Part shown: positions 7,301 to 64,000 of the stretch, one piece after another
How the letters are laid out: each line of letters opens with the position of its first letter
Position numbering within the stretch: position 1 is the first letter of the stretch
From: Octopus bimaculoides
Taxonomy: Eukaryota
Assembly: GCF_001194135.2 (NCBI RefSeq)
Contig: NC_069004.1
Coordinates: 2,018,934-2,082,933, forward strand
Reading direction: 5' to 3'
DNA length: 64,000 nt
The notes under the pieces: model-generated
The model's input: the letters and a program-made list of their open reading frames with translations, nothing else
Told to the model about the DNA's origin: nothing
Database searches by the model: none
Position numbers and translations under genes: made by a program

Positions 7301-7395
7301 AATATTGTAATTGTGGATTAAGAGGAACATCAGAGAAATACAAAATAATACATCTTAAAATGTAAATGCATGCAGACAAAAGAAAATTACATGAC

Positions 7396-7426
<31 letters not shown>

Positions 7427-7476
7427 TATATATATATTTATATATATATATATATATACATATATATTTATATATA

Positions 7477-7513
<37 letters not shown>

Positions 7514-15604: not shown

Positions 15605-15646
<42 letters not shown>

Positions 15647-18600
15647 GCACATACACACACATGTATATGGGTATATGCCGTCCAACATTTTCCTCTAGTT
15701 TATTACAGGTATGGAGACACTTGAGACATGCACTAAATACATGGCAGGTTATTAAGCATGGTCAAAGTAAATGATTCAAGTAAGAGGGTAAGTGGGGTCG
15801 GGTGGGAGGTGGAAAATACAAATAAAATTACACTTTCTTGATATCAAGCAAAATCTGTACGACAAGAAGACCGTTGACGATAACTGATTCGTTCTTTTCT
15901 CCGTCCAGTATGTTGTTTAACAAACGACCGATAACTGGTTCACTGAAAAAAGCAAAATAAATAAAAACGGTTGTTTATACAAATCTGTTGAAGAAACCAA
16001 AGAACTACAGACATTAGTCATTCATCTAACTCAATATACATTAATCATTAATCTATATATGGTAGTGTGAGAGTGCATAGCCTAGTGGTTAGGGTATCGA
16101 ATTCATGATTGCAAGATCGTGGTTTCAATTCCTGGACTGGGTGGTGTGTTGTGTTTATGAGCAAAACGCTTCGTATCACGTTGCTCTGCATTCACTTCGA
16201 CATCTGATGTGTGGTACATCATTACACCTATTCACGCAGCATCAATTTGATGGAGGAAGTGAGCTTAACGTACAGCAGGAACATATAATCAGTACAAACA
16301 AATCATTTGCACAGGTTCTTCAGTAAGAAATTGCAGAACTGTCTTTCTCGGACTACAAGAGAGTACCATCATGTATGCTAGTCATTCATCTATACACATG
16401 TCCATGCGTGACATTTAGTAAATATTACTTTTTTTTTTTTTTTGTAGTAATTGAATGAACTCAAAATCACAAGGCTGTGAGTTCAATTCCTTGACAGGGT
16501 AACAAGGCAATTCTAATCATGTTGCTCTAATCTGTTCAAGTGAAACGACTAATAGCAAGCCCAGACGCAGGTTCCTTTTCTTCCGTCTGTTTCATCCAGG
16601 GGTGTTTCCACTGGGTCACATATAATGGTTTGATCATTTGGACTAATGAAAGAAAGGAACAATGGCAATTCATATGTCAAAGAAAGTAGTGATCACAACC
16701 AGTGAAGCAGTGTGAACCAATAATCGGAACCGGTATGCAAAGAGGGTTCAGTTGAGAAACTAGTCACCCCTATAAATATTAGATTTTGCAAACTGGTATA
16801 CTTACGATTCTAAAGTTGCCAAGAGGGGATATGGTTGAGGACAATCCTGAATCTGAGACGGTTGTTCTCGACCTAATCGGACAATATCACAAAGAAATTG
16901 AGCTGCATTTGTATGAAACTGTGGAGAAAAATAAAAATAATAAAAATTAAAATAATGAAAAATGAACAATGAAAATATATAAAAGGAATGAAATAGTGCT
17001 ATACATGATTACTACCAGCTAGTAAACAAAAAACAAAAAATTAAATATTTGAATTTTATGCAACTTTTTCATTGTAATTGCAAATTCAAAGTTCTAATCC
17101 TACCTCATATTAAGAAACGATTATCTCCCTTCTTACGTCTGCTTTCCATGCTGGAATGGGTTGGACAAGTCATCATGGCCAAAGTCATTTGTCATTAGGA
17201 GCAAACATTTGTACACATCATATGGCTGGGGTTTCTATGGCTGAATGCCCTTTCTATTGCCAACCACTTTACACAATGTACTGTGCACATGTTTTCATGG
17301 CATCAAAATTTTTTTTTAAATCTAAACTCCACCCTGAACCACCTGAGCATGGAAACACCATTTCCACAAACAGGAACAGTGTTTGGCCACCCGGTTATTG
17401 ATACGATAAGAACCATACAAACAGCAGATCTGATAATGGATTTTGAAATCCAGAAGCACACACACACACATACAGCAAATACAAAAAGTCACACACACAC
17501 ACACATGCATAGTAGATACAGAAGGGGAACACACAGACACACAACAGAGAAACAACAAAGGTGGAAAATTACAGAATGGCGAATAAAAGTAACTCACATC
17601 TTCTTCAATTGATGGAACAACTTGATCCACGAGTCTTTCCACCAGTTTTTCTTCATTCAACCACTGAAATAGAAGAGAAAAGGAAATATAGACACAGAAC
17701 ATTTGCTTTAAATTTAAAGTTGAAATTCACTTGAAAATTTGGACCAAGGGAGTTTAGTGACAGAGTTCAATGATAGAGTACAAGAGATAAAATATTATTC
17801 ATGGTTTTCCACAACACAGTTTGGATTCCTTGGAACTATTTCATACATGTCTTTTATAAAGGTAAAAAGGCCAAAAATGTTAATTTGATCTTCCTATACA
17901 GTCTAAGCTTTCATCTACACACACACACACACACTCTCTCTCAATAATCAACATCCTGATAGATTTGCAAACTTTGAAAGCAACAAGTTTAAGTGCCTAG
18001 GTCACCCTTAACAGCTAATGACTAGTAAGACATCTCCAGTATTGGTACCACCATAAAACATGCCTAGTTCCTTTTCGTAGACAGTAAGCTTAAAATGTCA
18101 CCCTGCTTAACACTTTCATCTGGTTATGAAGTACATTTAGCTGAGTTCATTCGATTCAAAGCAAATGGGCCAAGCTTCCAACCAAAGAAGAACACATTCT
18201 ATTAACACACTGATTCCCACTTGGTCACTGCTTATCAGAGACAGCATGATATAAAGATTTTTCAGCCAATGCCAAATGAAAGGGGCCAAATCCAATATAT
18301 AACAGTACTTAAAAAGAAGTACTGGCATTGATTTCGTCGTAGTTTAATGTCTGTTTTCCATGCTGGCATAGGTTGGACGGTTTAAGTGGAGCTGGTAAGG
18401 CTAGGGCCCACACCAAGCGGCACTGGCATGGTTTCTACAACTGGATGCTCTTCCTAATGCCTAAATCGTTTGAGGCATGCTCCAGTATGGCCACAGGCCT
18501 ATGACTGAAACAAGCAAAAGATAAATGAAATGGAAATAATAATATAAGGTTAAAAAAAGAAGCTGACTGACCTCTATCATTTCAAACTTTAGTTTTGTAG

Positions 18601-19363: not shown

Positions 19364-20338
19364 CAAAAGAAGCTGGAAAATTTTTTTTGGTATTATTTGT
19401 TCATCATGCGTACGAACAACCATGCTACATGGCAGTGAAACATGGGCTGTAACTGCTGAGGACATACGTAAGCTCGCAAGGAATGAAGCCAGTATGCTCC
19501 GTTGGATGTGTAATGTCAATNNNNNNNNNNNNNNNNNNNNNNNNNNNNNNNNNNNNNNNNNNNNNNNNNNNNNNNNNNNNNNNNNNNNNNNNNNNNNNNN
19601 NNNNNNNNNNNNNNNNNNNNNNNNNNNNNNNNNNNNNNNNNNNNNNNNNNNNNNNNNNNNNNNNNNNNNNNNNNNNNNNNNNNNNNNNNNNNNNNNNNNN
19701 NNNNNNNNNNNNNNNGCTTGTGCGGGTGGCACATAAAAGACACCATTTCGAGCGTGGCCGTTTTCGTGCGGGTGACACGTAAAAGCACCCACTACACTCT
19801 CTGAGTGGTTGGCGTTAGGAAGGGCATCCAGCTGTAGAAACTCTGCCAAATCAGACTGGAGCCTGGTGTTGCCATCCGGTTTCACCAGTCCTCAGTCAAA
19901 TCGTCCAACCCATGCTAGCATGGAAAGCGGACGTTAAACGATGATGATGATGATGATTACATATGGTTCATTTGCTTATAGGAATCACAACCCTGGGTCA
20001 TCCATGGGGCTGGGCCCTTAATGGATGTGAAACCATTGGTCACTCTATGACCAGACTTATACTCAACTGAATAAGAAATACACTATTGCTCTACGCTTTA
20101 GAGTGTGCCTCTTTTTCTGCTATATGATACAAATATATATATATATATATAAAATGAGGTTATATTATACTGGTAGGTAAGAATTCTAAACATTTTAAAG
20201 AGTGCAGTATAAATGCAGGCAACCAGAAACGTAATTTGGCAAATGCTATTACTTCATTAAAATACTTCAGATATAAACACTTTAGAGAAAACAAGAAATA
20301 AATCAACATGGAGAGAGGGAGGGAGAGAAAGAGAGTGA

Positions 20339-20435
<97 letters not shown>

Positions 20436-23400
20436 TTTAAATAATTTTACATAATTTATCTATGCTGCTGCTTTTCTCCTCATGGCTTCCACTCTTTCGC
20501 TCTGGATGTTGCTCTGTCAATGGCTGTGGTTCGCAAATGGTTCCACATTCCCCATCCACTGGCCTGCTTCTTCTTTAACAGTTCTTTTCCAGATGTTCTT
20601 GGGTCTTCGGCCCTTCCCCCTTCCATTCCAGGGGCTCATGTTGTGGCTGTCATACAATTGCTGATGAGATCTTTCCACAAGATGTGCCCAATGTACTGCA
20701 ACCTCCTTCACCATACTTCACATCTCGTGCCCTCCGTCCTAGCACTTCCCAAGCATGGCCTCCTCGCTCTTTGTATGCTCTTGCCACTGTGTCTTAAGTA
20801 TCAGCCTCAGACATCTGCACAGGAAGACATCTAGTTCCCTCTCGTCCCCTTTGGTCATTTTCTTTCTTTACCAAATATTCGAACAGTTTCATTTTGAGGC
20901 TAAAGCTGATGCTATTGGAACTACAGATGCTCTTAGGACAACTGAACGTGACTTGGGATTTGGCCAATCTGTTTACTAGGCCCATGGTACCAACATTAGA
21001 GACAAAGGTTCCTAAATATTCAAACCTGTCCAAACATTCCAATATTTCTCTATTGATCATGAAGCTGTCTGTACTTTTGAGAAATATATTTTTTATATTT
21101 TCACTCCAATGTGTTTCTGGAATAAATTTGTTTTTGTTTTCAATATTACTTGTAGATTTGCTGTTACATTTTGAAAATTGAAATAACTGACATTATGCCC
21201 AGTACAATTATACTTTTTCGGTATTTGCTATTACACCAACTTTTGAAAATTCTTCCTGTTCAGAATCACTGTAACTGAATGTGAAAGTAGCATTTGCAGG
21301 ATGTTTTTGTTTTTGGTTTTTACAAGTGGAAAAAAATTATGAAAAAGATACATACATGGAAAAAATATATGAAAAAATTTGGAGAACACAAATTTCACAT
21401 TATAAAAATGTTGGCTGATGTATAGTAAGTGTCCATCCAGTAAAATCATGGGATATCGTTAAAAGAGTAATAAGACATATCTCAATATTCTCTTTTAAAT
21501 ATAAATAGGTAATTAGGGATGGTATTGTGCAGTAACCTAGAACCATGAGAAGTTTGGGGCATTTGTTGATAGACTGATAATGAGAATTAATTAAGCATAT
21601 AAAATTAAGTGCTCTGTTCAAATTCATCTGAAATACCTGCAACTGTGGCGTACAAATTCACATCATAACCAAAAGGGGAATTTACCTATAACGCTGTTTC
21701 TCTTCAATATCTTCAGATGGTTCTTCAGTAACCATATTGACCATTTCTCTTAAGTTATCCGGACGGATAAGACTAAAATAAGAAGCAACAACCAACACAT
21801 GAGTAAGTGGACATATAAGGTCATTTAGAAAGAAAGTAAAAGATGATAAATAATGAAGTATTTCGAACAGAAATATCACAGAAATAACATCATTTAAGAG
21901 AATAGCAATTTTGTAAACTCTGACACGATACTTTATCACCAGCCGATAGTTCTGTCTCTCTCCTACTTTAAGCACCAAACAGAAAAATAAGAATACTTAC
22001 AAGTCAATAAGCTTTTTATGTCTGGCTTTACATTCTTGAAGAATATCATCTTCGTCAAGAAGTTCTTGTAAGGTAACATCCTGAAAAACAGATATTAAAA
22101 GATTGCAAGAAGACAAAGAAGAATAAAAGTCCTTTGGTTAAATTTTCTTCATCAGAATATTTTTTCAAACATTTTTTCAAACAAGATAATGAAGTTAATG
22201 TATCCAGTAATAGAAGTATTCCTACTAAATCAGTTAAATGTTCATTTTAATTTCACTGATGCTTAATACCAAATAATTCACTTTCACTTTGAGATTTTAA
22301 AATGTTTTATGATCAGAAAAGTGAAAGAATTTTTTTCATTTGAAATTGAAAATTCTTCCGTTTTCTCAGTTGAATTTAATGTCTCCAACTATCACGCTCT
22401 CTCTCTCTCTCTCTCTTCATTTATTGGTTCATGCTCCCATTACCAGCATGACCTCAAACAAAAACACATAACAAATTATGAAATATGATAGTATCATATT
22501 TAAGAAATAAGATATTTAGAGGCAGAGTTTCCAATTCAGGCTGTTTGTTGATAATTTAGTCGGTTCATTCATTTAATTTTGTTCTCTCTTTAATGGTTTA
22601 CGTTGATGTTGTCGTTGCTTTGTACCAAGTCAATCAGAAAATAAAATAGTTTACAATAAACCACACTGAAGATATAGATATATATTATTAGCGATGGAAG
22701 CAGTATTAATACCAAAAATTAATCTTTATATCCATCTTAACATGGATGTCTTGTTAGATCACTGAAGACTGCCTTATTAGCCTTGAGACATTCTCTTGTA
22801 CAGGCACTCGGTGCATAAAAGTACAATCATAGATTGTAGCAGACAAGAAGAATTGTCTGTGATGGGTGCCAGAATTCTCATATCAAGTGATTTCATTCTA
22901 CTGGAAGTCATCAGTGGGAAGTGTCGTCCAGTCACTGCATACCAGTCAAATCTCACTGCTATAGAGAATATCAGAATCTTTCCAGACACCGATGCCACAA
23001 GTAGCAAACTGGTATGATCAACATTTCCATATATTCCTGGCAGTTTCGTTTTTGAGATGCACGTATGGCTTTATGGCTAAGAAGCTTGCTTTCCAACCCT
23101 ATGCTTTCTGGTTCAATCCCACTGTGCAGCACATTGGATAAGGGCCTTTTAATTGAGCCCCTTGTTGACCCAAGTCCTGTAATTGGATCAGGTAGGCGGA
23201 AACTGAAAGAAGCCTGTCGTATGTACATGTGTATGAGTAACTGTGTGAGTGTATGTTTGTGTCTCCTTGTTTTGACATCTTATGATAGTTGTAAATAAGT
23301 GTCACTGTCATACAAGCAGTGTCATTCAATTCCAACATTCTGTGAAAACATGTCTAGCCATGGGGAAATATTACCTTGCTTGGAATTGTGTGAGAGTTGG

Positions 23401-31275: not shown

Positions 31276-33646
31276 TCACTTAGCTCATAACAGTATCAAG
31301 TTGTAGTTTCTGTAATGCTAGCTTACAATCTAACAGTCATTTTCTCAAGAGTAGATTTTCCATTGCACCAAATAATGTACCCTCCTGAAGCTTCTGCCAA
31401 CTTTTTATTAGTTATCCTGAAACGTGTACATCCTTGTCTCTGATGGGGGGGTTGGGTTCCAAAAATACATCATAAGAAATGAATCATCTCCACATATTTA
31501 GTAAATGGAATGAATGGTAGATTCATTCGACACCAAACTTGCCACCCATAGCAGCAAAACTTCTATCACATATTTTTCTTGATCATCTCAACATTTTCTT
31601 GTGAAGAATTCACTCATCTGCATCATTTTTGATGATCAGGAGCCTTAGAATTTTCCTGTTCCCTGATCCCAATGTTGATGGGTACAAGAAGATAAACCTG
31701 TATAAAAAGAAATACACGGCTTCACAGCACAGTAAACACAAGAGATATAATCAATGCGTTCTGGTTAACCAAGCACTATGGGTGCTCAGTGAGGCACATT
31801 TCTGCAGAATAAGCAGAATCTTTGACCGATCATTGACCCATGTTACCACAGACCAATCTGTGATCAGGGTAACATGGATCACAACTGAGTATTCCATGTT
31901 ATCCCAATTCAGAGATGAATGAATCAGTAATAAACTAGGCTACATGTAGTAGTAATTGTTGTTAAGACACGTCTACCTTGATCAAAGAAATTACAATCCT
32001 GTCTACATTATCCAATGTACCTTTCCATCCCTATTTGAAGGGTCATAGGTGCAGGCACAGCCTTTAGGCACTGACGCAGCTGTGTGGTTAAGAAGCTTGC
32101 TTCCCAACCATAGAGTTTTAGGTTCAGTTCCACTGAGCAGCACTTTTGGAAAATATCTTCTACTATAACCTTGGGCCAACTAAAGCCTTGTTAGTGAATT
32201 TGAGTACAATTTTATTTTATTTTTAATTAAAATAAAAGATAAGCACCACAACTCTTAGACATGATATAACAGGAATTAAAGAGTTGAAACAAGTGTGAAT
32301 CCATTTTGGCTGAGTCTGACCATGTGACAAGAGTGATGGGATAATTTTAATCCACTGACAGATAACCACTATGGATGTCCTTGTAGGGCACATGATCTTC
32401 ACGAGAAAACATCTTCACCAGGCTTTGTCTCTCGAAAACAGCTCAGCAGCAGCAGTCGGTTGACACAAATAAATAAATTAACAAATATCCCACCTGTAGT
32501 TCAAATTCATTTCTTCTCTGCCCCCCTTGTTATCAGTAACCAGTGAAATCCAGTTGCTTTCTCTTCATCCTGGCAAGATATGATTGCTTTGAGATTTTTT
32601 TTTTTTTTCACAGAAAATGTATTTTTTGAAATTTATGTAAAATTTATGTGAAATCCATAGCATGAAATTTATTATTTTAAAATAAATGACATGAATGCCA
32701 ATGTAGAACAAAACAAATTATATAACACCAAGTTCTAGTGTCAACTTTCATCAAAACCTAGAATGTATAAATCCTATTTGTATGCCATGTTCCATACTAA
32801 AATAGTTCCCTCATCTGCACACATCATCCAATCTCTTTCATATCAACCATTTTCTCATTATTGTGTAAATTTGAAATGATTATCAAACTAGATCATACCC
32901 TGTGCTTTCCTAATCTATAGCTACAGACTGTCTGCAATTTCATTATATATATAAATATATATATAGTAAAGCTTATTTGCCAACAGAATGTGGTGGTCCT
33001 ATAAAGGACGATGTTACTGTTGTTTAAGCCCCAGGAAAACATCTTTTCCAGCTTCCTGTCAACACAGTCTGTGTCCGTATAGCTTGCGAGGGAGGTCATC
33101 ACTCCCATCTCCAGCCTTACGTGATACTCACAGACCATGGTTTTTGGGTGGTTACCCGTCCTCCGTGTGAGATAATCATATATATATAGAGAGAGATAGC
33201 GATAGAGAGAGCAAAATCATTATTACTTTAACAGCCTATATTTCAAATATTGAACTTGTATTTTATATCTATCTTGATTAGGCAGTAATCTCATCGTTGG
33301 TTATTAGTAAACAATAAATAGCTCAGATCCTATCCCCGTATCAACATATTGTTAGTTATCTGAGCAGCACTTGCCTTGGTGTACCTAGGTGTTGAGAATA
33401 AACACAATAGTATCTAAGATAGACTGTTGTCCAATCAAAACAGAGATTTTTTTTTTCCTATCATTTAACACCACAAACCAGTTAGTCACCAACTTTGTGA
33501 ATGCATTTTAAAACATTTAATCACTAAAAATACAAAATAAAAGGTTGGTAAACCGAAAGGTTATAAATCTCAGAACTTACTCCGGGATAGACAAACAATC
33601 GTCTTTGGACCCTATTGTCAATGAAACTTGCGGAGTAACTTGTCAC

Positions 33647-36600: not shown

Positions 36601-38319
36601 CTTGAAAGCGACATAGCTTCAGTCGAATTTTGTTTAGCTGAAGACGAGAAAATGTATCTTCCAAGAAAGTCATTTGTTTCACTATGAAATGACCAAGACC
36701 TCTATAAGGAATCTGTCTGCTGCAGAAAATGGTTCTGCATTTTTTTAAGACAAAGAAATGGCATTAATGGAAAAGATTAATCTGCCATATCATTGTTGTT
36801 GTTTAACTTTTTTATCTTTTATGTGTTCCAGTCATTAGACTGCGGCCATGCTGGAGCACTGCCTCAACCTTTTAGATGAACAAATGAATCAACCTTAGTA
36901 CTTCTTTATTAAACCTGATACTTATTCTGTTGGTCTTTTTGCTGAACCAACCACACCCAGTCCAAATATTCTATTTATTTTATGTTCAAACTAGCTGAGT
37001 CTGGCTTCTCATACCTGCTCTACAATGTCATTCCATAAATAAATTAATCCCATCATCGAAATCTTGAAGCTACAAAATAATGTATGATTTATTTAAAACA
37101 ATATGAATACATAAACATTACATTCAACAGAGTAAGCTGAATGCTAAAGGGTCGGCACATTTTGGCTGAGTATCCTACAGACACATGTACCTTTAATGTA
37201 TTTCTCAGACCAAATCAGCAAGACATCAATATTACAAGGCCAGGGCTTTATCTAACTCTTTGGCATTCAAATTACTCTGTCAAACGCAATACTTATTTAT
37301 TCACATCGCTTTGAATTAATCATGCATTATCTCGTAGCTTTGAGAGTTTGATGATGTGAATTGTTTATTTTTAGAATGACATTGTGGCTGTGAAGGGTTA
37401 GATCGTGACAGTTTGAACAATAAAACAAGTAGAATATTTGGGCTGGGTATGTCCAGTGTAAATGCTAAAAGGTTAATTTACAGGTAAAATCCAAAGAAAA
37501 AGGTAAGAGATAGAAGAATCAATCCTATTACTGGACCAATATTCTATTTTTCAAGACAAAGATGACCTTGGCAAGATCAGAACTCTTTGTACTTTGTGTT
37601 AAAATTCTGGAGGCAATTCTTTCACTCCTTCTTCTACAATATCTCAGCCCAGTTTCACCAATGTTATACTAACCCATTTCTATTCATTCATTTCACAAAC
37701 CAACCAACCAACCAACTGAAGCATGAAAGACTAATGTGTTTCTTTGTATTCTGGTTAACTGTAGTGCTTTTGTTATAGCCATGTGAATGACAACTCTATT
37801 CACACACGCAGCTTATATAAATTTTACTCCAGTTTCTTATACTGGAAGACACTATATCATACAACAGGTTTTGCTCTGGCATTTTCTTCTTTTTGTTTCA
37901 ATCAGATCGGTCTCTCACCAACTTTTCTGAGACACAAAACTCTTTGACAGTTCCAGGATTTCCACACTCTTCAGCATCAATCTCTCACTCTGCCATTAAT
38001 GCTTGTAGTTTTGCCATTTTTTTTTTCTGTTGGAAACCGAATTAAATTTTCTAAAACATTTCTGCCGACAAATCTGTGCATAAACAAGGAAGAGGTTTAT
38101 GAGTAATATACAGACATACAAAACCTGTTTAAGCAATCAAATATCATTTCATATCTGACATCACAGGTATAGTCCCAGGGATTTTTTGAAGGGAGGACAC
38201 AAGGTCAGAAGGAAATACAATTCCTGGAGAAAAAGGCATAATATTATTTAGAAGGGCACACTTCTTTTCTTGAGGGGGAGGGTACGTGCTCTTCAGCCAC
38301 CCCCCTGTTTGAAAGTGAT

Positions 38320-38900
38320 AAAAATCAAACATCCAGTCAACATCGTGGTGTTTGGGGTAGTCACTAGTGATGGCGACGTTTTGCCTCCAGTCATCTTCCC
38401 ACACAGCCTCAGACTTAACACGTGTTTGGGGATAGTGCTGTCCTGGGTCAAGAGGGTGGCTGCTGGAAGACCCTATGTCTGGCCACAGGACTCTGCACCA
38501 TGCCACACAAGCAGGAGAATCCAGTCGTGGCTGTCAGACAATTTCTGTGACCACATCGCTCTTAACTCCCCAGACTGCAACGCCCTTCGTTATTATGTGT
38601 GGGGCGCAGTTGAGGGAGAGACCAACAAAACTCCTTGCAACACCAAAGATGAACTGAAGGCAAGGATTATGGCAGCATTCACCAACTTAAACAAGGAGAC
38701 CGTCCAGAAGAGTTGCAGGAGATTCTGAAGTCGTCTGGAGACTGTGGTTGAAGCTAATGGCAATTTTATTGAATAAATTTACTCTTTAGTATTTCAAGAT
38801 ATTTTTTATGTAACTTTGGTAAAGATATGTTAAAATAAAATGTCAGTGTTATTTCCATTTTTGCATAATTTAGACGACAATTTATTCACCGCACCCTATA
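38320..38900 (+). mobile_element. Tc1/mariner superfamily relic (maT/DD37D-like), 3' part
   Basis: VFGVVTSDGDV, YVWPQDSAPCHTS, NSPDCNALRYYVWG, TKDELKARI, CRRF*SRLETVVEANGNFIE*. Internal deletions and a premature stop. Ends in CACCCTATA, like a right TIR. Confidence 0.85.
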
Positions 38901-48215: not shown

Positions 48216-48744
48216 GTGTTAATAATGTTTAACCGCCACTAGACATGACAATAATATAAAGTCTAAGCATTGTTGCTATGTCAATTGAGTAGAGAGCCAT
48301 TTTGAACAAGGAGAGGTTTTAGAATAAAGAGATCCATCTATCGACATATACCTAAATGTATATATAGATCCATTCATGTCTAGTTACGAACTATTTAGCA
48401 ATTGAAGAAATATCAAGTTATATATTATTGTCTGCAGTAGCTTATGAATCCGATGCTATCATCCATGTCAAGTAACTTGTTAAAGCTTCAGGTGAATGGA
48501 GAAACGTGAAACCCGTCAACATCAAAAAGGAAACAAAAAAAAAAATAATCACCGTTGTTAGTAGATATAAAAAGGCAATCACTAAACGACGGTGACATAT
48601 CGGTGATTATGTCTTCATTACTCAGGGTGGATAACGTAATAAGTTACTCACATACACACACACATATATATATAATACTTTCTCTTTTACATGTGTATAT
48701 AAATGCGTATGTCTGTATTAAAATCTGTGTCATTAGTGTTTGAG

Positions 48745-48745
48745 C

Positions 48746-48797
<52 letters not shown>

Positions 48798-48831
48798 CGT
48801 GTGTGTGTGCACACGCATAACTATCATATGA

Positions 48832-48865
<34 letters not shown>

Positions 48866-48993
48866 GTGTGTTAATAGTGTGTATATATACAGTATGTGTG
48901 CGTGTGTTAGTAGTGTATATAGTGTGTGTGTGTATGATTATGACTGTTTTACGTATATGTATGTGTGTGCGTGTATATATATGTATATATGTG

Positions 48994-49056
<63 letters not shown>
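48745..49056. repeat. Compound (TA)n/(TG)n microsatellite block
   Basis: Seen directly. Confidence 0.95.
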
Positions 49057-49259
49057 CAGGTACACGTCCAGTAACATCCACATATGTGGTGCACGAGGCG
49101 ATCTATATACACTGAAAGTGTAATCGGGAGGATAGCAAAATTTTATAAAACAAGAACTAGATCAATACATTAAAAAAAAAAAGCAATAACTACAAAAACA
49201 ACAACCAACGGTGGCCAAGAAAGACAAGAGACAGAGACACAGAGAGACACAGATTGCAA

Positions 49260-57446: not shown

Positions 57447-59808
57447 CCGAATTGGTGATTAAATAAATGGAGATATTTAATTAAAATAATGTGTGTGTGT
57501 GTATATATATATATATATAAAGATTAGTTACATTAAACACACCACACACACGTGTGTGTGCTTGTCAGCATTTTCCATTTCTTATACTGACTTTTTACTC
57601 TACTCGATTCCTTTTTCTCTCCATCTTTTATCCTTGTTCCCTTCCTCTGCTATTTGAAAACCATCAGATTCTCACAATCAGTCCGGTCTTTTAGCGGCCC
57701 CTCTTTTCTTGTTTCCACCTAGGGACCTCCTAAGTACCAGTTCTCGTTAAGTTTTTCTTAAGTCATCATCATTCTATCTCCCTCTTACAATTCACCTTGC
57801 GCAGTTATCTTACCTTCCTCTTTCAAACATTTCATACAGTATTTCTTTTTTCTGTTTCTCTAATATCGATATTGATATGATTCCATCTATATCTTTCCCA
57901 TTTTGATGACAGGCACAGTCCAAAACGTTACTAAATTCTTCTTTTTACAACTCGCAAACCAATTATGATGTTTATAATTTTACAGTCTGATTTCAGCCGG
58001 TGTAGTCCAGCTCTAAGCTTAAGCACTCTAACGATTATTTCAATATATGCATACATTACATTAAAAGTACACACACATTATTAGTGTTATAAGCACACAC
58101 GTACACTTGTAACTGCGTGTTTGATAGATATGTAGACAGAGCGCTAGCAAGCTGGTACATAATGTAATTACATACAGTATCCATATATTTTAAGTTTAGA
58201 TTCATGTATATAGAAAGTTAACGAAGCACTAGCCACTCAAATTACAGCAGGCATGCATTAAAAGCTAAGCTGTTTTTGTATCATATATAGATTAAAAATA
58301 CACACAAACGTATACATATAGAAATCAGATACATACATCTACTGCTACCACACCTTATTCAGGTTAATCTCTCCAATATTGCATATTTATGTTAATAGTA
58401 TCTGAGCATACACAATGCAGCAGTAGCGTGGAATATATAAAGATGTGCAATTTACGCATATATGGCACCATCGCCACCACGACCATTATCACCGTCATTG
58501 ACAGCAACACCCCCTTAGCTCCTCCACCAACGCAAATACCACAACTATTATAACAGCCACCACCACCATTATCGCCGCCGCCGTCTTTGGATACAGTCAA
58601 TCAATCAAAAGCACTTCCCTCGTTACCAAGGAAACTGGCCCGGGCCTCTGTATGCCGTAAGAACGAACAGCCTACATTTCATGAATTTCACCAGCTGTGA
58701 ACTTTATCATATTCACCTACTTAGTGTAGATTTACCGAATATAATGCTCTTATTCTATGATATAGAAACTGACCAAGGAAGCCAACAAACTTCGGATAAC
58801 TAAACATCTGAAAGAAACTGCTTAAACAAAATATTTTTTATACCAGACTAACATTTCTACGCGCACATATTCATATACCATACTTATATTTTGTTTCAAT
58901 TAACTCCCATGTTACTTGGAGATGAAATTATGACCTTATTTCATTTTACTATTTCACCTTATGGAATTAAGACTGCTTTCTGAGAAGGAATGATGGCTAA
59001 TTCAGGAAAAACCATATAATATTATATATGATTAATATTACATGTCTGCATATCGATTTTAGTTGAGCAATATATATATTCTTTAAAGCTGTTCGCTTTA
59101 CCTCTTTCTCATTTTTAAGCATCGTGCAAATATCTATTTTGAGACTGCATAAACTATATATGATTTGTAATATATCACTCACTCTACAACCCAATATTTG
59201 CCTTATTATCGCAATGAATTCCATGTTTTTCGTTATGATATAGTTTCCAATTTATTTCATCTAATCTATTTATCTCAACTGATAAAACTTTATTTCCCGC
59301 CTAACTGGCATATTTTTGCCGATCTTTTCACTCTGGACATTTTTCTTTGTAGATATCTTTTTTAACATCTTTTCCAAGATAGCAAAATACATCTATGGAT
59401 GAGTCTTATATATTTGGATTGCGAGGTAATCATCCGGATAACACATATAAATATATCGCTTCATAAATGGGATTTTTGTTAAAAATAGGTATATTACGAT
59501 CAATAATTTCTTCAAATATCACCACTTTATATAGAAATCTGAAACCAGAGGAACAAGATTAATTCGGTATTTATACCTCGTCTATTTTTCTAACACGGGA
59601 AGGGGATTAAAAAAAAAATTGAATTTAAAAGATAAATAGCTCACGTCCGACAGGAGTGTACATGGAAACACTGTATAAAATAAACATCAAATTTGGTCCG
59701 TGTGTCTCAACTTGAAACTAGCTGACCAACAACAACCTGCTCGTCTCCGCCCAGGGGTAAGAAAAAAATCAACAAAAAACACATGAGGTAAATACAACTT
59801 GTCTCATC

Positions 59809-60396
59809 ATGTTGACGGCCGAAGAAGAATTCTTGAGAACATGGAGAGTGAAGAAAAATGAGAAAATAGGTAAAAATGTAGTTAGCATGACAAAGGAACA
59901 ATACAACAAATACCTGCTCATTTTGAAAGGGGCTTGGGACAAGAAAACTGCTTGGACTGGGGAAGAATACAATGTAACACGCCGTTTTGATTTGGTCACC
60001 AACGATCAAGGAACAAAACTAATTAAGAGAAGAAGAAGAAGAGACTCCGAATCCGTTCGTCCTTACATTGCCGATGAGGATTTATTTCGAGCCCTGAAAG
60101 CTGTCCACTTAACACATTCTCATGCTGGTATTAACAGAATGCAGAACATCACCCGTCAGTTATATGCCAATGTGACAGCCGAAGCCATAAAAATCTATAT
60201 TTCTTTATGTCCGAGGTGCAGTAGTCGCAGACATGGAAATTACAAGACCCATTGTAGTAAGGCTAGATTCAACAAGAGTCCAGTGAAGTCAGCAAATCCG
60301 CTAACGGGTAGATGGAACGACAAGAAGAATGACCAGTCACAGTCGGAATTGTTGATGTTGAGAATATTAAAAAGTGAGGATTTGGTGATGGAAAAT
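59809..60396 (+). CDS. KRBA2/SCAND3-like (Ginger-class transposase-derived) N-terminal module with integrase H2C2 zinc-binding motif, no catalytic core
   Basis: Uninterrupted ORF from ATG 59809 with H100-X4-H105-X28-C134-X2-C137 (HLTHSHAG...YANVTAEAIKIYISLCPRC), as in KRBA2-like proteins. Phase-0 donor AAT|GTAAGT after 60396. If unspliced, the ORF stops at 60462. Confidence 0.75.
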
Positions 60397-60446
60397 GTAA
60401 GTTTATATGTTTGTCTCCCCTGGACTCTCTTTCTATTCTGTTTTAC

Positions 60447-60890
60447 ATTTAACACCATTTAAACGTGGGTCCAATCTGAATGGGGGTGGGACATTGTGAC
60501 GATAACCAGATGTATATTGCATTTTTTAAAAATTTAACACCATTAAACGTCGGTTCTAATCCGACTGGGGTCAGTGTAAACGTTAAACAAATGTATATAA
60601 CTTTCGTTATTTAACGCTATTAAACATGGATTGACATGATTAGGAGCACTGTAAACATAAACGGATGCATCTAACTTTAACATCATTGATCGTGGGTTCT
60701 AATTTGGTCAGGGGCATTGCTATAACAAACAACTGTAATGTTCTGGGGTTTTTTTTTTTAATATTTAACACCATTGCACATAAATTCTAACCTAATTAGG
60801 ACGTTACAACGCTTAACAAATGGAAAAATAACTTTATTTAACACTGTTGAACGCGGGCATTGTAAGAATAAACAACTGAATATGACATTA
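60447..60890. repeat. Degenerate minisatellite, 6 units of 66-88 bp
   Basis: Motif (A/C)TTTAACACCATT(A/G)AACGTGGGTTCTAAT, with variants, starts at 60447, 60532, 60609, 60675, 60763 and 60836. Confidence 0.75.
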
Positions 60891-61824
60891 GATACCAAAA
60901 AAAAAAAAAATTGTCTATATAGCAGTGGGTAGATAGTTGCCTGCTGAAATTTAAAATATTGATAAAGAGTATTATTTCATTATGGTAGTATTGAGGACTG
61001 TTATAAAATTATATGTACATAACTCGAATTATAATGCTACATGTTTATAGCATTGTAAGAAAGGTATTTCACTTAAGTTATGTTATGTTGTGAAATAAAA
61101 GTCATCGTCTTAATTAGTAAAAAGGAGAAGAAAAAAAATGCTAAAAATTTGATCAGCTGATGTTTCTAGCATGATTCGTTATTCGCCCCAAACTTCCATC
61201 GGCAAGGCACACATCTCGGCTAAAAATATATTTTAGGGTAGAATCTCCTGTGTTACCCTTCAAGCTTTTATTTTGTCTTGGTCTGAGACTCTTATGTTTC
61301 CGTGCATGAAAAAGGAGTTAATCGAAAGAGATACAATTATAGTTTTTATGAATTTCAGCATTGCATTTAAAAAAAAAAATACCTTCAAATAAAATAGCAA
61401 ACATTACTTGTATTTCTTCTAATGTGTGAAATCTTGCCGAAGTTGTGGTCGTGAGAAAAACTTGGAAAGTCACGTTGAAGATTTTACGCAGCTGAAATGT
61501 AGAGATGTGGAATATATTGTAGATCACATCTCCACACGTTTTTATTTGCCTTAGTAACTGTATGGTTGATGTTACTATGGGCACTCAGTTATATAACCCC
61601 TTCTCTAACAATGTAATTTATATCACAGATCAAGACAGCTTGTATGTCAAACACATTTCGTTTGATTTATTGTAGTATCCAAGAAAAAAAAAAAGGTATT
61701 GTAGGAACATAGAAAGAGAGGAGGGAGTTTCCTGAGACTGCAGTCTTTTGAGAAGATGGATGTGATGTTGGTTTAGGATTTAAATCGAATATCCCGAATA
61801 TATTTCGAATAGGTCAAGTGTATA

Positions 61825-62015
61825 TATTTATTTCTTTATTGCCCACAGGAGGCTAAACATAGAGAGGACAAACAAGGATATACAAAGGGATTAAGTCGAT
61901 TACATCGACCCTAGTGCGTAACTGGTAATAGATTTATCGACCCCGAAAGGATGAAAGGCAAAGTCGACCTCGGCGGAATTTGAACTCAGAACGTAACGGC
62001 AGACGAAATACCGTG
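61825..62015 (-). repeat. Third SINE-like family (ACTTTGCCTTTCATCCTTTCGGGGTCGATAAA core)
   Basis: Homologous copies at about 9245-9400 (-) and 45375-45545 (+). Confidence 0.75.
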
Positions 62016-62812
62016 TATATACTGGAACATTTTGAAGTATAGGTTTCATGAGTTATTTGAGTATGATAAAAATTATTGAATTTGTGGTTATCTAGATTTT
62101 ATTACCATCCCTTAATAGTTTAAACTTTGCTTATATGCTGTCACTCAATACTCAAAGATTCCTAAGATCGTACTGGCCTGGGGTGGCGTGAGGGAGAATG
62201 GATGAATCAAGGGTGCCGGAGTAGAAGTAACACGAAACCAACTTGCTCAAAGAAGCAGAGGCCTCTCTAATAGTAGAAATGACCGAGAGGAGGCAACATG
62301 CTTTGACACCGAAGTTTGGAGAGATGATGACCGAATTCATATCAGGTTGTCGAGTAGCCTTTTTTTATGCGGTACTTCATTCTGGATCTCACACGGACTT
62401 CGTAGAAAGTTAGTTGTTGGGGACTCAAGTATTTTCGGGCCCTGTAGTCTTTGATGTATTAAGTATGTGGGATTATTAAAAGAGATCCTTAATAATGGGA
62501 AGTCTAGCTGTTGTAGCGACCTCGAGTGTTCACGATTTTTTCACTTTCCAAACCTCGGGCCAAACTTTTCGCTGAATAACTTTTTCATAAAATTGCATTT
62601 TCTTGAAAAAACTCTTTCTGTCTGTTTTTCATTCTACCAACAGCCTGAAATAATCCTAACTTTTGGATTGGTAGAGTGGCGGACGGAAGTACATTGCTAT
62701 AGTAAAAGTATCTTTAAAAAATTTATATTCTACCGAGAGTGCCTTTACTTTACATCTTCCTTAGTTAGGGAGTATCAATCACATACGACTGGGGTCGATT
62801 TAATCGACTATA

Positions 62813-63550
62813 CACACTGAAAATCCTATATCCGAAATTCCCAAATCCGAAAACACCCCAAATCCGAAAGTTTTTTGTGGACATGCCTCAAATAGAATAT
62901 TCTACAAAGTGCTAGGAAAGTTCCACCAAGTGCAGATGTTGTGTGCCGTTATGGCACGTGACTTCACCTACCCTGGGTACAGTTTTCCCATCAAAGTTCA
63001 GTTGCCAATTTGACGGCAGTTTGTTCGCAGGTCATCACAGTGACACCTTCGCTCGTTACCTGTGCTCTGTGACGTGGAGATATTGTCGGAAATGCCGAAA
63101 AGGCTTGGAAATACCCACATGGGTAATCGTGAAAGGAAAAAGAGAAAACATTTATCTTTAACTATAACGCAGAAAGTTAAGTTGTTGAAAAAACTTGACA
63201 GCGGTGTAAGTGTGAAGCATCTGACTGAGGAGTTTGGTGTCGGTACAACGACTGTCTACGACCTGAAAAAACAGAAGGACAAACTGTTAAAGTTCTACGA
63301 AGAAAGTGATGATCAAAGCTTGATGAAAAGCAGAAAAAAATTACATAGAGCGAAAAATGAAGATCTCGATCGTGTTCTAATGGAATGGATTCGTCAGCGT
63401 CGAAGTGAACGCATGCCGATTAATGCAGTGCTGATCAGGAAACAAGCAAAAATCTATCATAACAAACTGAAAATTGAGGGTAGCTGTGAATATTCAGCAG
63501 GCTGGTTGCAAAAATTTAGGAAAAGGCATGGCATTAAATCTTTAAAAACA
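62813..63550 (+). mobile_element. Tigger/pogo DNA transposon left end (Tigger4/Zombi-like), truncated
   Basis: TA at 62811-62812 followed by CACACTGAAAATCCTATATCCGAAATTCCCAAATCCGAAAACACCCCAAATCCGAAAGTTTTTTG, with the repeated TCCGAAA units of Tigger4-type ends, then a transposase ORF. No right TIR in the window. Confidence 0.8.
63092..63550 (+). CDS. Tigger/pogo transposase DNA-binding region (HTH_psq-like plus CENP-B-type HTH), no DDE domain
   Basis: MPKRLGNTHMGNRERKKRKHLSLTITQKVKLL...GVGTTTVYDLKK...LMEWIRQRR...YSAGWLQKFRKRHGI, 153 codons without stop or frameshift. Ends at phase-0 donor ACA|GTAAGC. The unspliced ORF stops at 63643. Confidence 0.85.
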
Positions 63551-63837
63551 GTAAGCACAAAACGTGATTTTTATTTTACACCTGAATTTCACCTGTGTAA
63601 TGAGTATAACACGACTAACATCGTTACTTGTACATTACTTTAAAAAAAAACCAAAATGCTATGTTGACTTTTTCAGTTTTCGTTTTATTTACCTGTAATC
63701 ATGGTCAATGCTTTGGGCTTTTAAAAAAACTTATATCTTACATAAAATCCAATATCCGTTATAGCGAAGAACGAAATACAAATGGCGTACGTGTACTGTA
63801 ATCTTTTAATCGAAACTGATGTTATCCTACTGTTCTG

Positions 63838-64000
63838 ATGGTAAGCGTGGGTGTGTGGTAAGAAGCCTACTTCCCAACTACATCGTTCCGGGTTCAATCC
63901 CACTGCGCGGCACCTTTGGCTAGTACCTTCTACTATAGCTTCGGGCCGGCCAAAGCCTTGTGAAAGGACTTGGTATACGGAAACTGAAAGAAGCTCATTG
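63838..64000 (+). repeat. tRNA-headed SINE, CpG-intact copy
   Basis: GGGTGTGTGGTAAGAAGC...CCGGGTTCAATCCCACTGCGCGGCACC...CGGGCCGGCCAAAGCCTTGTG. Confidence 0.85.

What the first reader, a model, noticed from the sequence alone, without database searches (positions are those of the whole stretch)
59700..63725. Two unrelated transposase-derived modules in tandem, each cut off at a phase-0 splice donor: possible swappable-first-exon locus
Seen: two same-strand, stop-free ORFs 2.7 kb apart, each with its own ATG. One is a Ginger/KRBA2-type H2C2 module (196 codons) and the other a Tigger HTH module (153 codons). Each loses its catalytic DDE core and ends at a consensus donor (GTAAGT at 60397, GTAAGC at 63551), both in phase 0. 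Almost every other TE fragment in the window carries stops or frameshifts. Known: capture of transposase DNA-binding domains into host genes by splicing is an established route to new regulators. Inference: these may be alternative N-terminal exons spliced onto a shared downstream exon, giving two DNA-binding specificities on one effector. That exon could lie beyond 64000, or at the nearby acceptor TTGACTTTTTCAG|63677, which would add FSFYLPVIMVNALGF*. A TATAAAA at about 59674, a donor at 59757 and an acceptor GTTCGCAG|63031 offer a second model, in which one promoter yields either protein by alternative splicing.
Basis: partly seen in the sequence, partly recalled or inferred. Interest (0 to 1): 0.82.

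Follow-up and report, generated by a model that had tools for sequence, protein, structure and literature searches.

The report
Two conserved transposase-derived DNA-binding exons
An octopus-type genome carries two unrelated reading frames borrowed from mobile elements that selection has kept intact: an old integrase-derived first exon of a host gene, and 2.7 kb downstream a younger Tigger DNA-binding module; that they swap onto one shared exon is not shown.

Summary
ORF1 (59809-60396, 196 codons, then GTAAGT) and ORF2 (63092-63550, 153 codons, then GTAAGC) are real, on the same strand, start with ATG and lack a catalytic core.

ORF1 is not a decaying transposon. It is the N-terminal part of a Ginger2/KRBA2-type integrase, carrying the HHCC zinc motif. 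It sits at the orthologous site in Argonauta hians and in a third cephalopod contig. dN/dS is 0.04-0.09, all indels are in frame, short non-coding blocks upstream are conserved, and a phase-0 donor closes the frame in every lineage. The Argonauta annotation splices it onward. I read it as the first coding exon of a host gene whose remaining exons lie beyond 64000.

In the hemichordate Ptychodera flava, a homologous module is an annotated alternative first exon of FoxP. I could not test that link in cephalopods.

ORF2 lies inside an internally deleted Tigger element with inverted repeats, a TA duplication and a nested SINE. It is absent from the Argonauta locus. Between two octopus species it evolves under purifying selection (dN/dS 0.21, no indels), and the constraint stops near the donor.

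The shared-exon model and both specific splice models remain unsupported. Verdict: partly supported.

The parts
58620..58710 (.). Conserved non-coding block 1, about 1.1 kb upstream of ORF1. Its core, ATTTCATGAATTTCACCAGCTGTGAACTTTA, contains an E-box (CAGCTG).
   Evidence: The block is colinear with Argonauta L001 8562-8662 at 79-81% identity, with a 31-nt perfect core. L002 8333-8363 gives a weaker match, 81% over 32 nt.
58858..58965 (.). Conserved non-coding block 2, upstream of ORF1.
   Evidence: It is colinear with Argonauta L001 8815-8940.
59809..60396 (+). ORF1: ATG-bearing first coding exon of 196 codons. It encodes an integrase N-terminal module (an NED-like part plus the HHCC zinc-binding domain) and a fast-evolving linker (aa 146-196).
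   Evidence: Argonauta has an orthologue at 73% aa identity. dN/dS is 0.086 overall and 0.041 for aa 1-145, and all indels are in frame. In all three species the ATG is the first in-frame ATG after an in-frame stop. The AlphaFold model has pLDDT 92.4, and its best PDB matches are PFV and MLV integrase N-terminal regions.
60106..60219 (+). HHCC zinc-binding motif: H100-x4-H105-x28-C134-x2-C137.
   Evidence: H100 and H105 are invariant, and C134 and C137 are present in at least 90% of the 40 aligned family members. 31 of the 40 match Pfam Integrase_H2C2.
60397..60402 (+). Phase-0 splice donor GTAAGT that closes ORF1.
   Evidence...GTGATGGAAAAT|GTAAGTTT is identical in Argonauta, and alignability is lost immediately after it. 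L002 ends its frame at AAA|GTGAGT, about 9 codons earlier. The Argonauta model splices from this donor to a 51-nt exon.
60447..60680 (.). Degenerate direct repeat of about 85 bp in the sequence downstream of ORF1 (presumed intron).
   Evidence: A self-match at 70% identity links 60447-60604 and 60532-60678.
61832..61995 (.). SINE fragment in the presumed intron.
   Evidence: It has copies at 9244-9340 and 45540-45444 in the window, and in L001.
62812..62870 (+). Left terminal inverted repeat region of the Tigger element, with a 15-bp subterminal repeat (GAAAATCCCAAATCC, 3.3 copies).
   Evidence: The TRF hit is. In the orthologous contig L003 the arms 240-272 and 1725-1757 are 88% complementary, and each is flanked by TA. 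The right arm lies beyond 64000.
63092..63550 (+). ORF2: Tigger/pogo DNA-binding module (CENP-B_N + HTH_Tnp_Tc5), 153 codons.
   Evidence: Pfam matches are. Against L003 it is 92.4% identical with no indels, while the flanks are 82-85% identical with many indels. dN/dS is 0.21, with a binomial P of 2.8e-5. Homology to Tigger proteins stops at ...GIKxLK.
63551..63643 (+). GTAAGC donor-like site followed by a 30-codon read-through tail ending in TAA.
   Evidence: The first 15 nt are identical in L003. After that, identity falls to about 0.6 with indels. The tail is not significantly similar to Tigger relatives.
63847..63994 (+). SINE nested in the Tigger element, shared with L003.
   Evidence: The window holds at least seven further copies. 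The SINE is present at the same place in L003.

Best explanation
The interval holds two independent domesticated, or at least selectively maintained, transposase fragments of different ages. They are not a demonstrated pair of exchangeable exons.

(A) ORF1 is an old cephalopod coding exon derived from the N-terminal region of a Ginger2/KRBA2/SCAND3-type integrase. That region comprises an NED-like part and the HHCC zinc-binding domain. Translation starts at ATG 59809. The exon is spliced at GTAAGT 60397, in phase 0, to exons that lie outside the window. It therefore puts an integrase-type oligomerisation and DNA-contact module at the N-terminus of a host protein. The partner protein is unknown. 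FoxP is a candidate, by analogy with the hemichordate Ptychodera flava.

(B) ORF2 is the DNA-binding half of an internally deleted Tigger/pogo element. The element inserted downstream of ORF1, on the same strand, in the octopus lineage after its split from Argonauta. Its reading frame has since been kept by purifying selection. I infer that it acts as a binding-domain-only protein, either as a repressor or regulator that binds the element's own ATCCGAAA repeats or as a nascent exon.

Shown: ORF coordinates, domain identity, orthology, selection, donor conservation and transposon structure.
Inferred: use of the donors in this species, the downstream partner, and the molecular roles.
For: ORF1:
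- Only two close homologues exist among 5.8 billion proteins, and both are cephalopod-type loci.
- The Argonauta locus L001 is colinear, with short conserved non-coding blocks upstream.
- dN/dS is 0.086 overall and 0.041 over the domain, with dS saturated at about 1.8.
- Indels in the linker are all in frame, and the frame ends at a consensus phase-0 donor in three lineages.
- The start codon is conserved, with in-frame stops just upstream.
- The Argonauta annotation joins the exon to a 51-nt exon that itself ends at CAG|GTAAAG. The model is 3'-partial.
- Relatives carry H2C2 + rve, and some add Znf_SCAND3.
- The HHCC residues are conserved.
- The structure model has pLDDT 92.4, and its eight best PDB matches are PFV integrase.
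- Precedent: Ptychodera FoxP isoforms X1-X3 begin with a homologous module (39-40% identity, E 4e-24). Its last exon ends in phase 0 and joins the same shared exon as the canonical first exon.

ORF2:
- Pfam domains are clear.
- TIRs and TA duplications are present in the orthologous contig.
- The left flank outside the TIR and the nested SINE are both shared, which argues for orthology.
- The ORF is 92.4% identical with no indels, against 82-85% with many indels in the flanks. There are 18 synonymous and 17 non-synonymous changes, giving dN/dS 0.21. The binomial P is 2.8e-5 and the Fisher P is 3.5e-5.
- The ORF has no counterpart in Argonauta. The Tigger ORF there is only 26% identical and belongs to a locally repeated family.
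Against: - No transcript data were available, so no splice junction in this species is shown.
- The Argonauta 51-nt exon has no detectable counterpart in 60397-64000.
- No database protein joins ORF1 to any host domain in a cephalopod.
- The selection test on ORF2 rests on one species pair and 35 substitutions.
- The right flank of the element lies outside the window, so orthology of L003 rests on about 115 bp of left flank plus the shared nested SINE.
- Both ORFs share strand and donor phase, and constraint on ORF2 stops near its donor.
Confidence: 0.55

Rival explanations
1. One reading: ORF1 and ORF2 are alternative first coding exons. Each has its own start and splices in phase 0 onto one shared downstream exon, giving two DNA-binding specificities on one effector.
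For: - The ORFs share strand and donor phase.
- Both are under purifying selection.
- Constraint on ORF2 ends within about 15 nt of its donor.
- Homology to Tigger proteins stops 1-2 codons before the donor.
- Ptychodera FoxP shows that this kind of H2C2 exon can be one of two exchangeable first exons.
- Argonauta also has a different Tigger binding-domain ORF, truncated after the same domain and followed by GTAAAG, downstream of its ORF1 on the same strand.
Against: - ORF2 is a lineage-specific insertion that still has its TIRs and TA duplication.
- The Argonauta Tigger ORF is not orthologous (26% identity) and belongs to a locally repeated family.
- No spliced product is on record.
- The four independently assembled contigs of the related species are colinear with the genome across the donor.
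- The proposed acceptor at 63677 adds a peptide that is not conserved.
- The shared exon would lie outside the window and was not seen.
Confidence: 0.15
2. ORF1 encodes a small stand-alone H2C2 protein, from a single exon or with only one or two tiny 3' exons. The conserved donor serves only a short 3' end, and there is no fusion to a larger host protein.
For: - The only cephalopod model (P0001) adds just 17 residues.
- No cephalopod protein in the database joins ORF1 to another domain.
- No FoxP-like or Q-rich exon lies within 3.6 kb downstream in the window, 10.5 kb in Argonauta or about 10 kb in L002.
Against: - The Argonauta model is 3'-partial, and its second exon ends at a good donor with no stop.
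- The read-through tails after the donor are unrelated in the three lineages.
- Cephalopod introns are long, so finding nothing within 4-10 kb says little.
Confidence: 0.2
3. Both ORFs are ordinary transposon relics. Their open frames and the GTAAG motifs are chance survivals, with no host function.
For: - Stop-free runs of 183 or more codons arise in 3.5% of simulated 64-kb sequences.
- GTAAG is common, at 0.86 per kb.
- ORF2 sits in a recognisable non-autonomous element.
Against: - dN/dS is 0.04-0.09 for ORF1 at saturated dS, and 0.21 for ORF2 with P 2.8e-5.
- Neither ORF has a second copy in the window.
- The next-best database hits are at 71% identity.
- The non-coding flanks of ORF1 are conserved.
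Confidence: 0.04

Closest known systems
Host-transposase fusion genes formed by alternative splicing (Cosby et al., bioRxiv 10.1101/2020.05.07.082677)
   Same: A transposon inserted in a gene supplies a DNA-binding domain and a splice site. The fusion is then kept by selection.
   Different: In 8 of the 9 cases traced there, the transposon gives an acceptor upstream of the transposase ORF. Here the modules are N-terminal, carry their own ATG and end at a donor. The host partner has not been identified, and no transcript evidence is in hand.
Ptychodera flava FoxP isoforms X1-X3 (XP_070559490-92), which have an H2C2 N-terminus
   Same: The N-terminal integrase module is homologous (39-40% identity over 136 aa). 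It starts at the same position (M..EEFL), carries its own ATG and ends at a phase-0 donor after the CxxC.
   Different: The Ptychodera module is split into two exons and ends 14 residues after the CxxC, against 59-68 residues in the octopods. Orthology is unresolved: the module is as similar to intact integrases as it is to ORF1, and a sister grouping has 11% bootstrap support. No FoxP exon was found near the cephalopod ORF1.
KRBA2, SCAND3 (ZBED9) and GIN1: domesticated Ginger/Gypsy-type integrase genes (PMC3575427, PMC2836005)
   Same: They come from the same integrase superfamily. ORF1's relatives carry H2C2 + rve + Znf_SCAND3.
   Different: Those genes keep the rve catalytic core. ORF1 keeps only the part N-terminal to it.
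Tigger/pogo-derived host genes (CENP-B, JRK, the TIGD family) and truncated-transposase repressors such as the P-element KP protein (own knowledge)
   Same: ORF2 has the CENP-B_N + HTH_Tnp_Tc5 pair. Like KP, it is the binding-domain-only product of an internally deleted element.
   Different: CENP-B, JRK and the TIGD genes keep a DDE_1-derived domain and have lost their TIRs. ORF2 still lies between TIRs, is at most as old as the octopus lineage, and has not been tested for repressor activity.
Variable-first-exon clusters (clustered protocadherins, UGT1A) and the Drosophila mod(mdg4) and lola loci (own knowledge)
   Same: They place several alternative exons encoding binding modules next to shared exons.
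   Different: Neither an array conserved between species nor any constant exon was demonstrated here. The mod(mdg4) and lola loci vary their C-terminal exons, not their first exons.

Membership tests
Retroviral-type integrase N-terminal domain (Pfam Integrase_H2C2; Ginger2/KRBA2/SCAND3 lineage) | HHCC motif H-x(3-7)-H-x(23-32)-C-x2-C | tested here: met
   The motif is H100-x4-H105-x28-C134-x2-C137. In 40 aligned relatives both H are invariant and both C are present in at least 90%.
Retroviral-type integrase N-terminal domain (Pfam Integrase_H2C2; Ginger2/KRBA2/SCAND3 lineage) | Score above Pfam's gathering cut-off (25.5 bits) | tested here: not met
   ORF1 itself scores 19.3-20.2 bits. 31 of the 40 aligned family members match at E < 0.01, with a best E of 4e-8.
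Retroviral-type integrase N-terminal domain (Pfam Integrase_H2C2; Ginger2/KRBA2/SCAND3 lineage) | Relatives are integrases with an rve core (and Znf_SCAND3) | tested here: met
   P0050, P0052, P0057, P0064, P0097, P0156 and P0165 have H2C2 + rve. P0136 and P0165 also have Znf_SCAND3.
Retroviral-type integrase N-terminal domain (Pfam Integrase_H2C2; Ginger2/KRBA2/SCAND3 lineage) | Fold of an integrase NED + NTD | tested here: inconclusive
   The model has pLDDT 92.4. The eight best PDB matches are PFV integrase, but with E 0.13-0.5 and probability 0.66-0.89. MLV integrase NTD (3nnq) gives TM 0.51 relative to the target.
Intact Ginger-type transposon or integrase gene | rve (DDE) catalytic core after the zinc domain | tested here: not met
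   No rve hit was found. The sequence after C137 is a lineage-specific linker and then a donor.
Intact Ginger-type transposon or integrase gene | Terminal inverted repeats and multiple copies | not tested
   TIRs around ORF1 were not sought. The window holds one copy, and each species has a single database hit.
Tigger/pogo transposon | CENP-B_N + HTH_Tnp_Tc5 binding domains | tested here: met
   The E-values are 6e-10 and 1e-15, both above the cut-offs.
Tigger/pogo transposon | DDE_1 catalytic domain | tested here: not met
   The domain is absent. Homology to relatives stops at ...GIKxLK, whereas they continue with ICGDKASADHEAAEKF...YNADET.
Tigger/pogo transposon | Terminal inverted repeats flanked by a TA duplication | tested here: met
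   In the orthologous contig L003 the 33-nt arms are 88% complementary, and TA lies outside each arm. The left arm is at window 62812-62870, and the right arm lies beyond 64000.
Tigger/pogo transposon | Dispersed near-identical copies (a young family) | tested here: not met
   The window has no second copy. The best database hit is the 89% orthologue, and the next is at 71%. Whole octopus genomes could not be searched.
Host-transposase fusion gene | Transposon-derived coding sequence under purifying selection | tested here: met
   dN/dS is 0.086 for ORF1 and 0.21 for ORF2.
Host-transposase fusion gene | Splicing to exons that encode a host domain | not testable with these tools
   The only evidence is the 3'-partial Argonauta gene model. 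No transcript data were available, and the downstream sequence is outside the window.
Alternative-first-exon locus with shared constant exons | Two or more ATG-bearing exons ending at donors of the same phase | tested here: met
   Both ORFs are in phase 0 and each has an ATG preceded by in-frame stops.
Alternative-first-exon locus with shared constant exons | A common acceptor or constant exon | not testable with these tools
   None lies within 63551-64000 that is conserved as coding sequence. The rest is outside the window.
Alternative-first-exon locus with shared constant exons | The array is conserved between species | tested here: not met
   Argonauta has ORF1 but not ORF2. In its place are a FLYWCH ORF and an unrelated Tigger ORF.
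FoxP gene with an H2C2 alternative first exon (as in Ptychodera flava) | FoxP exons downstream on the same strand | tested here: inconclusive
   No FoxP or Q-rich exon was found in the window, L001 or L002. Only 3.6-10.5 kb downstream could be read. The database searches meant to fetch the cephalopod FoxP locus failed or gave only fragments.
FoxP gene with an H2C2 alternative first exon (as in Ptychodera flava) | The H2C2 exon is the closest relative of the Ptychodera exon | tested here: inconclusive
   Identity to the Ptychodera exon is 35-40%, the same as to intact integrases. In the NJ bootstrap, the cephalopod clade has 100% support, the sister is P0047 in 11% of replicates, and P0049 takes about 37% of the sister weight.

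The most novel reading that the evidence does not exclude
ORF1 is the cephalopod counterpart of the H2C2 alternative first exon annotated in Ptychodera flava FoxP. That would mean an integrase-derived N-terminal isoform of FoxP dates back to early bilaterians and has gone unnoticed in the FoxP literature. The intron behind it would then act as a trap in which sense-strand Tigger binding domains are recruited as further lineage-specific first exons (ORF2 in octopus, a different one in Argonauta).
Probability: 0.15. Interest if true: 0.85.

Novelty: new member of a known kind. Interest (0 to 1): 0.55.

Why it matters
Domestication of transposase domains is well documented in vertebrates and poorly documented in molluscs.

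ORF1 would be a deeply conserved cephalopod coding exon made only of the N-terminal, non-catalytic part of an integrase. It sits at the N-terminus of a host protein and is joined through a donor rather than an acceptor, which is an unusual geometry for transposase capture. The only public model for it is labelled 'hypothetical predicted protein, partial'.

The Ptychodera FoxP isoforms show that this module can be one of two exchangeable first exons of a key neural transcription factor. Two evolutionary FoxP papers I checked mention no integrase or transposon exon. If the cephalopod exon also belongs to FoxP, it would point to an old and overlooked FoxP isoform.

ORF2 offers a young, datable case of a binding-domain-only Tigger product kept by selection while still lying inside its element.

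Tried and rejected
1. Fetching the Argonauta or Octopus FoxP locus to test linkage with ORF1. Two protein searches with the Ptychodera FoxP sequence timed out. The third, with the 79-aa FOXP-CC region, returned only fragments of 135 aa or less and no cephalopod entry.
2. Looking in the window for the Argonauta 51-nt second exon. Neither blastn-short, tblastn, a local alignment against shuffles nor an M[MK]QE motif scan found anything.
3. Testing whether ORF2 belongs to a shared deletion derivative, with the read-through tail homologous to the tails of P0004 and P0008. The local alignment scores were not significant (P 0.07-0.9), so I rejected this.
4. Testing whether the ORF2 read-through tail is coding. 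There are 16 changes, giving dN/dS 0.33, and divergence is about 20%, as in the neutral flanks. This is not distinguishable from no constraint.
5. Structure prediction from 3 sequences was useless (pLDDT 38). It was repeated with 40 sequences.
6. A sequence search of ORF1 against the PDB found no meaningful hit.
7. An Rfam scan of 58000-64000 found nothing.
8. Looking for the conserved upstream block in the Ptychodera FoxP locus gave only chance-level matches.
9. A literature search for the origin of the SRR runs behind L003-L006 found nothing relevant. Whether those contigs derive from RNA or DNA is unknown.
10. Testing for a mod(mdg4)-like reading of the Argonauta FLYWCH ORF. It has its own ATG and a stop, and only a weak in-frame acceptor. 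I did not pursue it.

Full report
**1. Observation**

The + strand holds ORF1 and ORF2 exactly as described.
- ORF1 has its ATG at 59809, runs 196 codons to 60396, and is followed by GTAAGT at 60397.
- ORF2 has its ATG at 63092, runs 153 codons to 63550, and is followed by GTAAGC at 63551.
- Both donors are in phase 0.
- ORF1 and ORF2 give the longest stop-free runs in the window, apart from artefacts across an N-run.

ORF length and the donor motif alone are only moderately unusual.
- Simulated 64-kb sequences reach 183 or more stop-free codons in 3.5% of trials.
- GTAAG occurs 0.86 times per kb on this strand.
- The weight of the evidence therefore has to come from homology and conservation.

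**2. What ORF1 is**

Pfam gives only a sub-threshold Integrase_H2C2 hit. A profile built from ORF1 and its two close homologues (A2) found 458 relatives among 1.84 billion proteins.

Many of the longer relatives that I scanned are integrases.
- P0050, P0052, P0057, P0064, P0097, P0156 and P0165 have H2C2 followed by rve.
- P0136 and P0165 also carry Znf_SCAND3.
- This is the Ginger2/KRBA2/SCAND3 lineage (PMC3575427).

The zinc-binding motif is intact.
- In a 40-sequence alignment H100 and H105 are invariant, and C134 and C137 are nearly so.
- 31 of the 40 members hit Integrase_H2C2.

With that alignment AlphaFold gives a confident model of residues 1-150 (pLDDT 92.4, pTM 0.84).
- Its eight best PDB matches are all prototype foamy virus integrase chains.
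- The MLV integrase N-terminal domain also appears.
- The statistics are weak, with E 0.13-0.5.
- The module thus looks like the N-terminal extension plus HHCC domain of an integrase, the part that contacts DNA ends and holds intasomes together (own knowledge).
- No rve core follows it.

**3. ORF1 is a conserved host exon, not a relic**

Among 5.8 billion proteins only two close homologues exist.
- P0001 is a 'hypothetical predicted protein, partial' of Argonauta hians.
- P0002 comes from a 221-kb ENA contig.

The Argonauta locus (L001) aligns with the window only in three places.
- Over ORF1, at 80.7% nucleotide identity.
- Over the donor.
- Over two short upstream blocks, 58620-58710 and 58858-58965, the first with a 31-nt perfect core containing an E-box.
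- Islands of identity in otherwise unalignable sequence are what orthologous loci look like, not what transposon copies look like.

The selection signal is strong.
- dN/dS against Argonauta is 0.086.
- It is 0.041 for residues 1-145 and 0.21 for the linker.
- dS is about 1.8, so it is saturated.
- All four indels are in frame.

The frame ends at a consensus phase-0 donor in all three lineages.
- The two octopods share ...GTGATGGAAAAT|GTAAGTTT, and similarity then stops.
- The third lineage (L002) ends its frame at AAA|GTGAGT, nine codons earlier.
- L002 has one extra base in an AAAATTTT run. This may be an assembly error or a real frameshift.
- The read-through tails are unrelated in the three lineages.

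The ATG is preceded by in-frame stops in all three, so translation starts in this exon.

The Argonauta model splices the exon to a 51-nt exon (tag|CTTGAA...CTCCAG|gtaaag) and is 3'-partial, so more exons must follow. I could not find that small exon in 60397-64000. The next exon of the window's gene must therefore lie beyond 64000.

**4. The FoxP lead**

One relative, P0047 (E 2e-22), carries FOXP-CC and Forkhead domains behind the H2C2 module. It is XP_070559492.1, forkhead box protein P1-like isoform X3 of the hemichordate Ptychodera flava.
- Isoforms X1-X3 begin with the H2C2 module.
- Isoforms X4-X7 begin with a conventional N-terminus.
- All of them converge at ...VMQQVLMQAGPK.

At the Ptychodera locus (L007) the layout is as follows.
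- The conventional first coding exon is at 10001-10156 and ends CAG|GTGAGT in phase 0.
- The H2C2 module lies inside the following intron as two exons, 20553-20723 (with its own ATG) and 21329-21610 (ending CCA|GTGAGA in phase 0).
- The shared exon starts at 24767.

Whether the cephalopod exon is its counterpart is open.
- ORF1 is 39-40% identical to the Ptychodera module, but equally close to intact integrases.
- A neighbour-joining tree recovers the cephalopod clade in 100% of bootstraps. Ptychodera is its sister in only 11%.
- No FoxP or Q-rich exon lies in the window, in the 10.5 kb of Argonauta sequence downstream, or in the roughly 10 kb of L002 downstream.
- My attempts to retrieve the cephalopod FoxP locus failed.
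- Two evolutionary studies of FoxP do not mention an integrase or transposon exon.

**5. What ORF2 is**

ORF2 has CENP-B_N and HTH_Tnp_Tc5 domains.
- Its relatives (P0005, P0011, P0012) continue in frame into ...ICGDKASADHEAAEKF...YNADET.
- ORF2's homology stops at ...GIKSLK, one to two codons before GTAAGC.
- The 30-codon read-through tail shows no significant similarity to those relatives.

A 2-kb contig from a related octopus was assembled independently in four runs (L003-L006). It is colinear with window 62697-64000, including about 115 bp to the left of the element and the SINE nested at 63847-63994.
- In that contig, 33-nt inverted arms (88% complementary) flank the ORF, and TA lies outside each arm.
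- The left arm is at window 62812-62870 and carries a 15-bp subterminal repeat.
- The right arm lies beyond the window end.
- ORF2 is therefore the binding half of an internally deleted Tigger element.

Even so, selection has acted on it.
- The ORF is 92.4% identical between the two species with no indel in 459 bp.
- The flanks are 82-85% identical with many indels (Fisher P 3.5e-5).
- There are 18 synonymous and 17 non-synonymous differences, giving dN/dS 0.21 (binomial P 2.8e-5).
- In 30-nt windows the high identity spans 63087-63566 and then falls to about 0.6.

Three further points separate ORF2 from an ordinary young element and from ORF1.
- The window has no second copy, and no database protein falls between 89% and 71% identity. 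ORF2 is therefore not a young multi-copy family as far as these data reach.
- Argonauta has no orthologue.
- Its own Tigger ORF, 6.8 kb downstream of ORF1, is 26% identical and has a second fragment nearby.

**6. Interpretation**

The best reading is two independent, selectively maintained transposase fragments.

ORF1 is an old cephalopod first coding exon that places an integrase N-terminal module on a host protein, through the donor at 60397.

ORF2 is a younger product of the octopus lineage, lying in the sequence downstream of that exon. It is either a stand-alone binding-domain-only protein or a nascent exon.
- A role as a repressor or regulator acting on the element's ATCCGAAA repeats is an inference by analogy with truncated transposases.

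Same strand, same phase, and constraint ending at the donor all fit it. But it lacks its key element, the shared exon, and it is weakened by the lineage-specific, TIR-bounded nature of ORF2.

Its two concrete splice proposals fail on conservation.
- The peptide added after 63677 differs and loses its stop in the related species.
- The donor at 59757 is not conserved in Argonauta.
- The acceptor at 63031 lies next to a 1-nt indel in neutrally evolving sequence.

**7. Comparison and novelty**

The closest known kind is the host-transposase fusion gene formed by splicing (bioRxiv 10.1101/2020.05.07.082677). In 8 of the 9 cases traced there, the transposon supplies an acceptor upstream of the transposase ORF. 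Here the modules are N-terminal and end at donors.

The domesticated integrases KRBA2, SCAND3 and GIN1 keep the catalytic core, whereas ORF1 does not.

I file the finding as a new member of a known kind, with one open lead (FoxP) that would raise its interest considerably.

Noticed in passing
window 63092-63550; proteins P0006, P0008, P0009: The ORF2 binding domain is 64-76% identical to short proteins annotated as 'jerky protein homolog' in Lemur catta and Ochotona princeps, and to a shark (Chiloscyllium punctatum) protein. It is equally close to many metagenome fragments. Such similarity between a cephalopod and vertebrates suggests a Tigger family with a patchy distribution, possibly spread by horizontal transfer.
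   Followed up: no
L001 (Argonauta hians BAAFZT010000077.1) 13792-14424, 17457-17969, 20670-21122: Downstream of the Argonauta ORF1, all on the same strand, lie three further features. The first is a FLYWCH zinc-finger ORF (Pfam E 1e-11). The second is an unrelated Tigger binding-domain ORF ending ...LQDVK|GTAAAG. The third is the start of an 871-aa gene with DUF3504/QRICH1-like and BTB domains. Together they form a cluster of mobile-element-derived binding modules.
   Followed up: partly
window 58676-58706: A 31-nt block identical between the window and Argonauta (ATTTCATGAATTTCACCAGCTGTGAACTTTA) contains an E-box (CAGCTG). It is weakly kept in a third cephalopod contig. It is a candidate enhancer or promoter element of the ORF1 gene.
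   Followed up: partly
window about 5560-17700, minus strand: These appear to be exons of a SAPS-domain gene (protein phosphatase 6 regulatory subunit-like). The ORF at 13854-14258 hits Pfam SAPS with E 4e-15.
   Followed up: partly
window about 19400-19700: A run of N (an assembly gap) produces artificial long ORFs containing X.
   Followed up: no
window 38270-38728 (+): A 152-aa ORF looks like the C-terminal part of a mariner/Tc1-type transposase. That reading comes from my own knowledge of the sequence. Pfam gave no hit at E below 0.01.
   Followed up: partly
window 63847-63994 and at least seven other sites (for example 15246-15393, 44132-43984, 32081-32191): This is an abundant SINE family, 70-78% identical between copies. 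It is also present in Argonauta L001 but was not detected in L002, which suggests L002 comes from a more distant cephalopod.
   Followed up: partly
proteins P0142, P0095, P0055 (insects): The same integrase N-terminal module occurs inside a ZAD + C2H2 zinc-finger protein and in THAP-domain proteins of beetles. This hints that the module has been captured repeatedly by host regulators.
   Followed up: no
window 48687-49115: A dense TA/CA microsatellite tract gives spurious ORFs on both strands.
   Followed up: no
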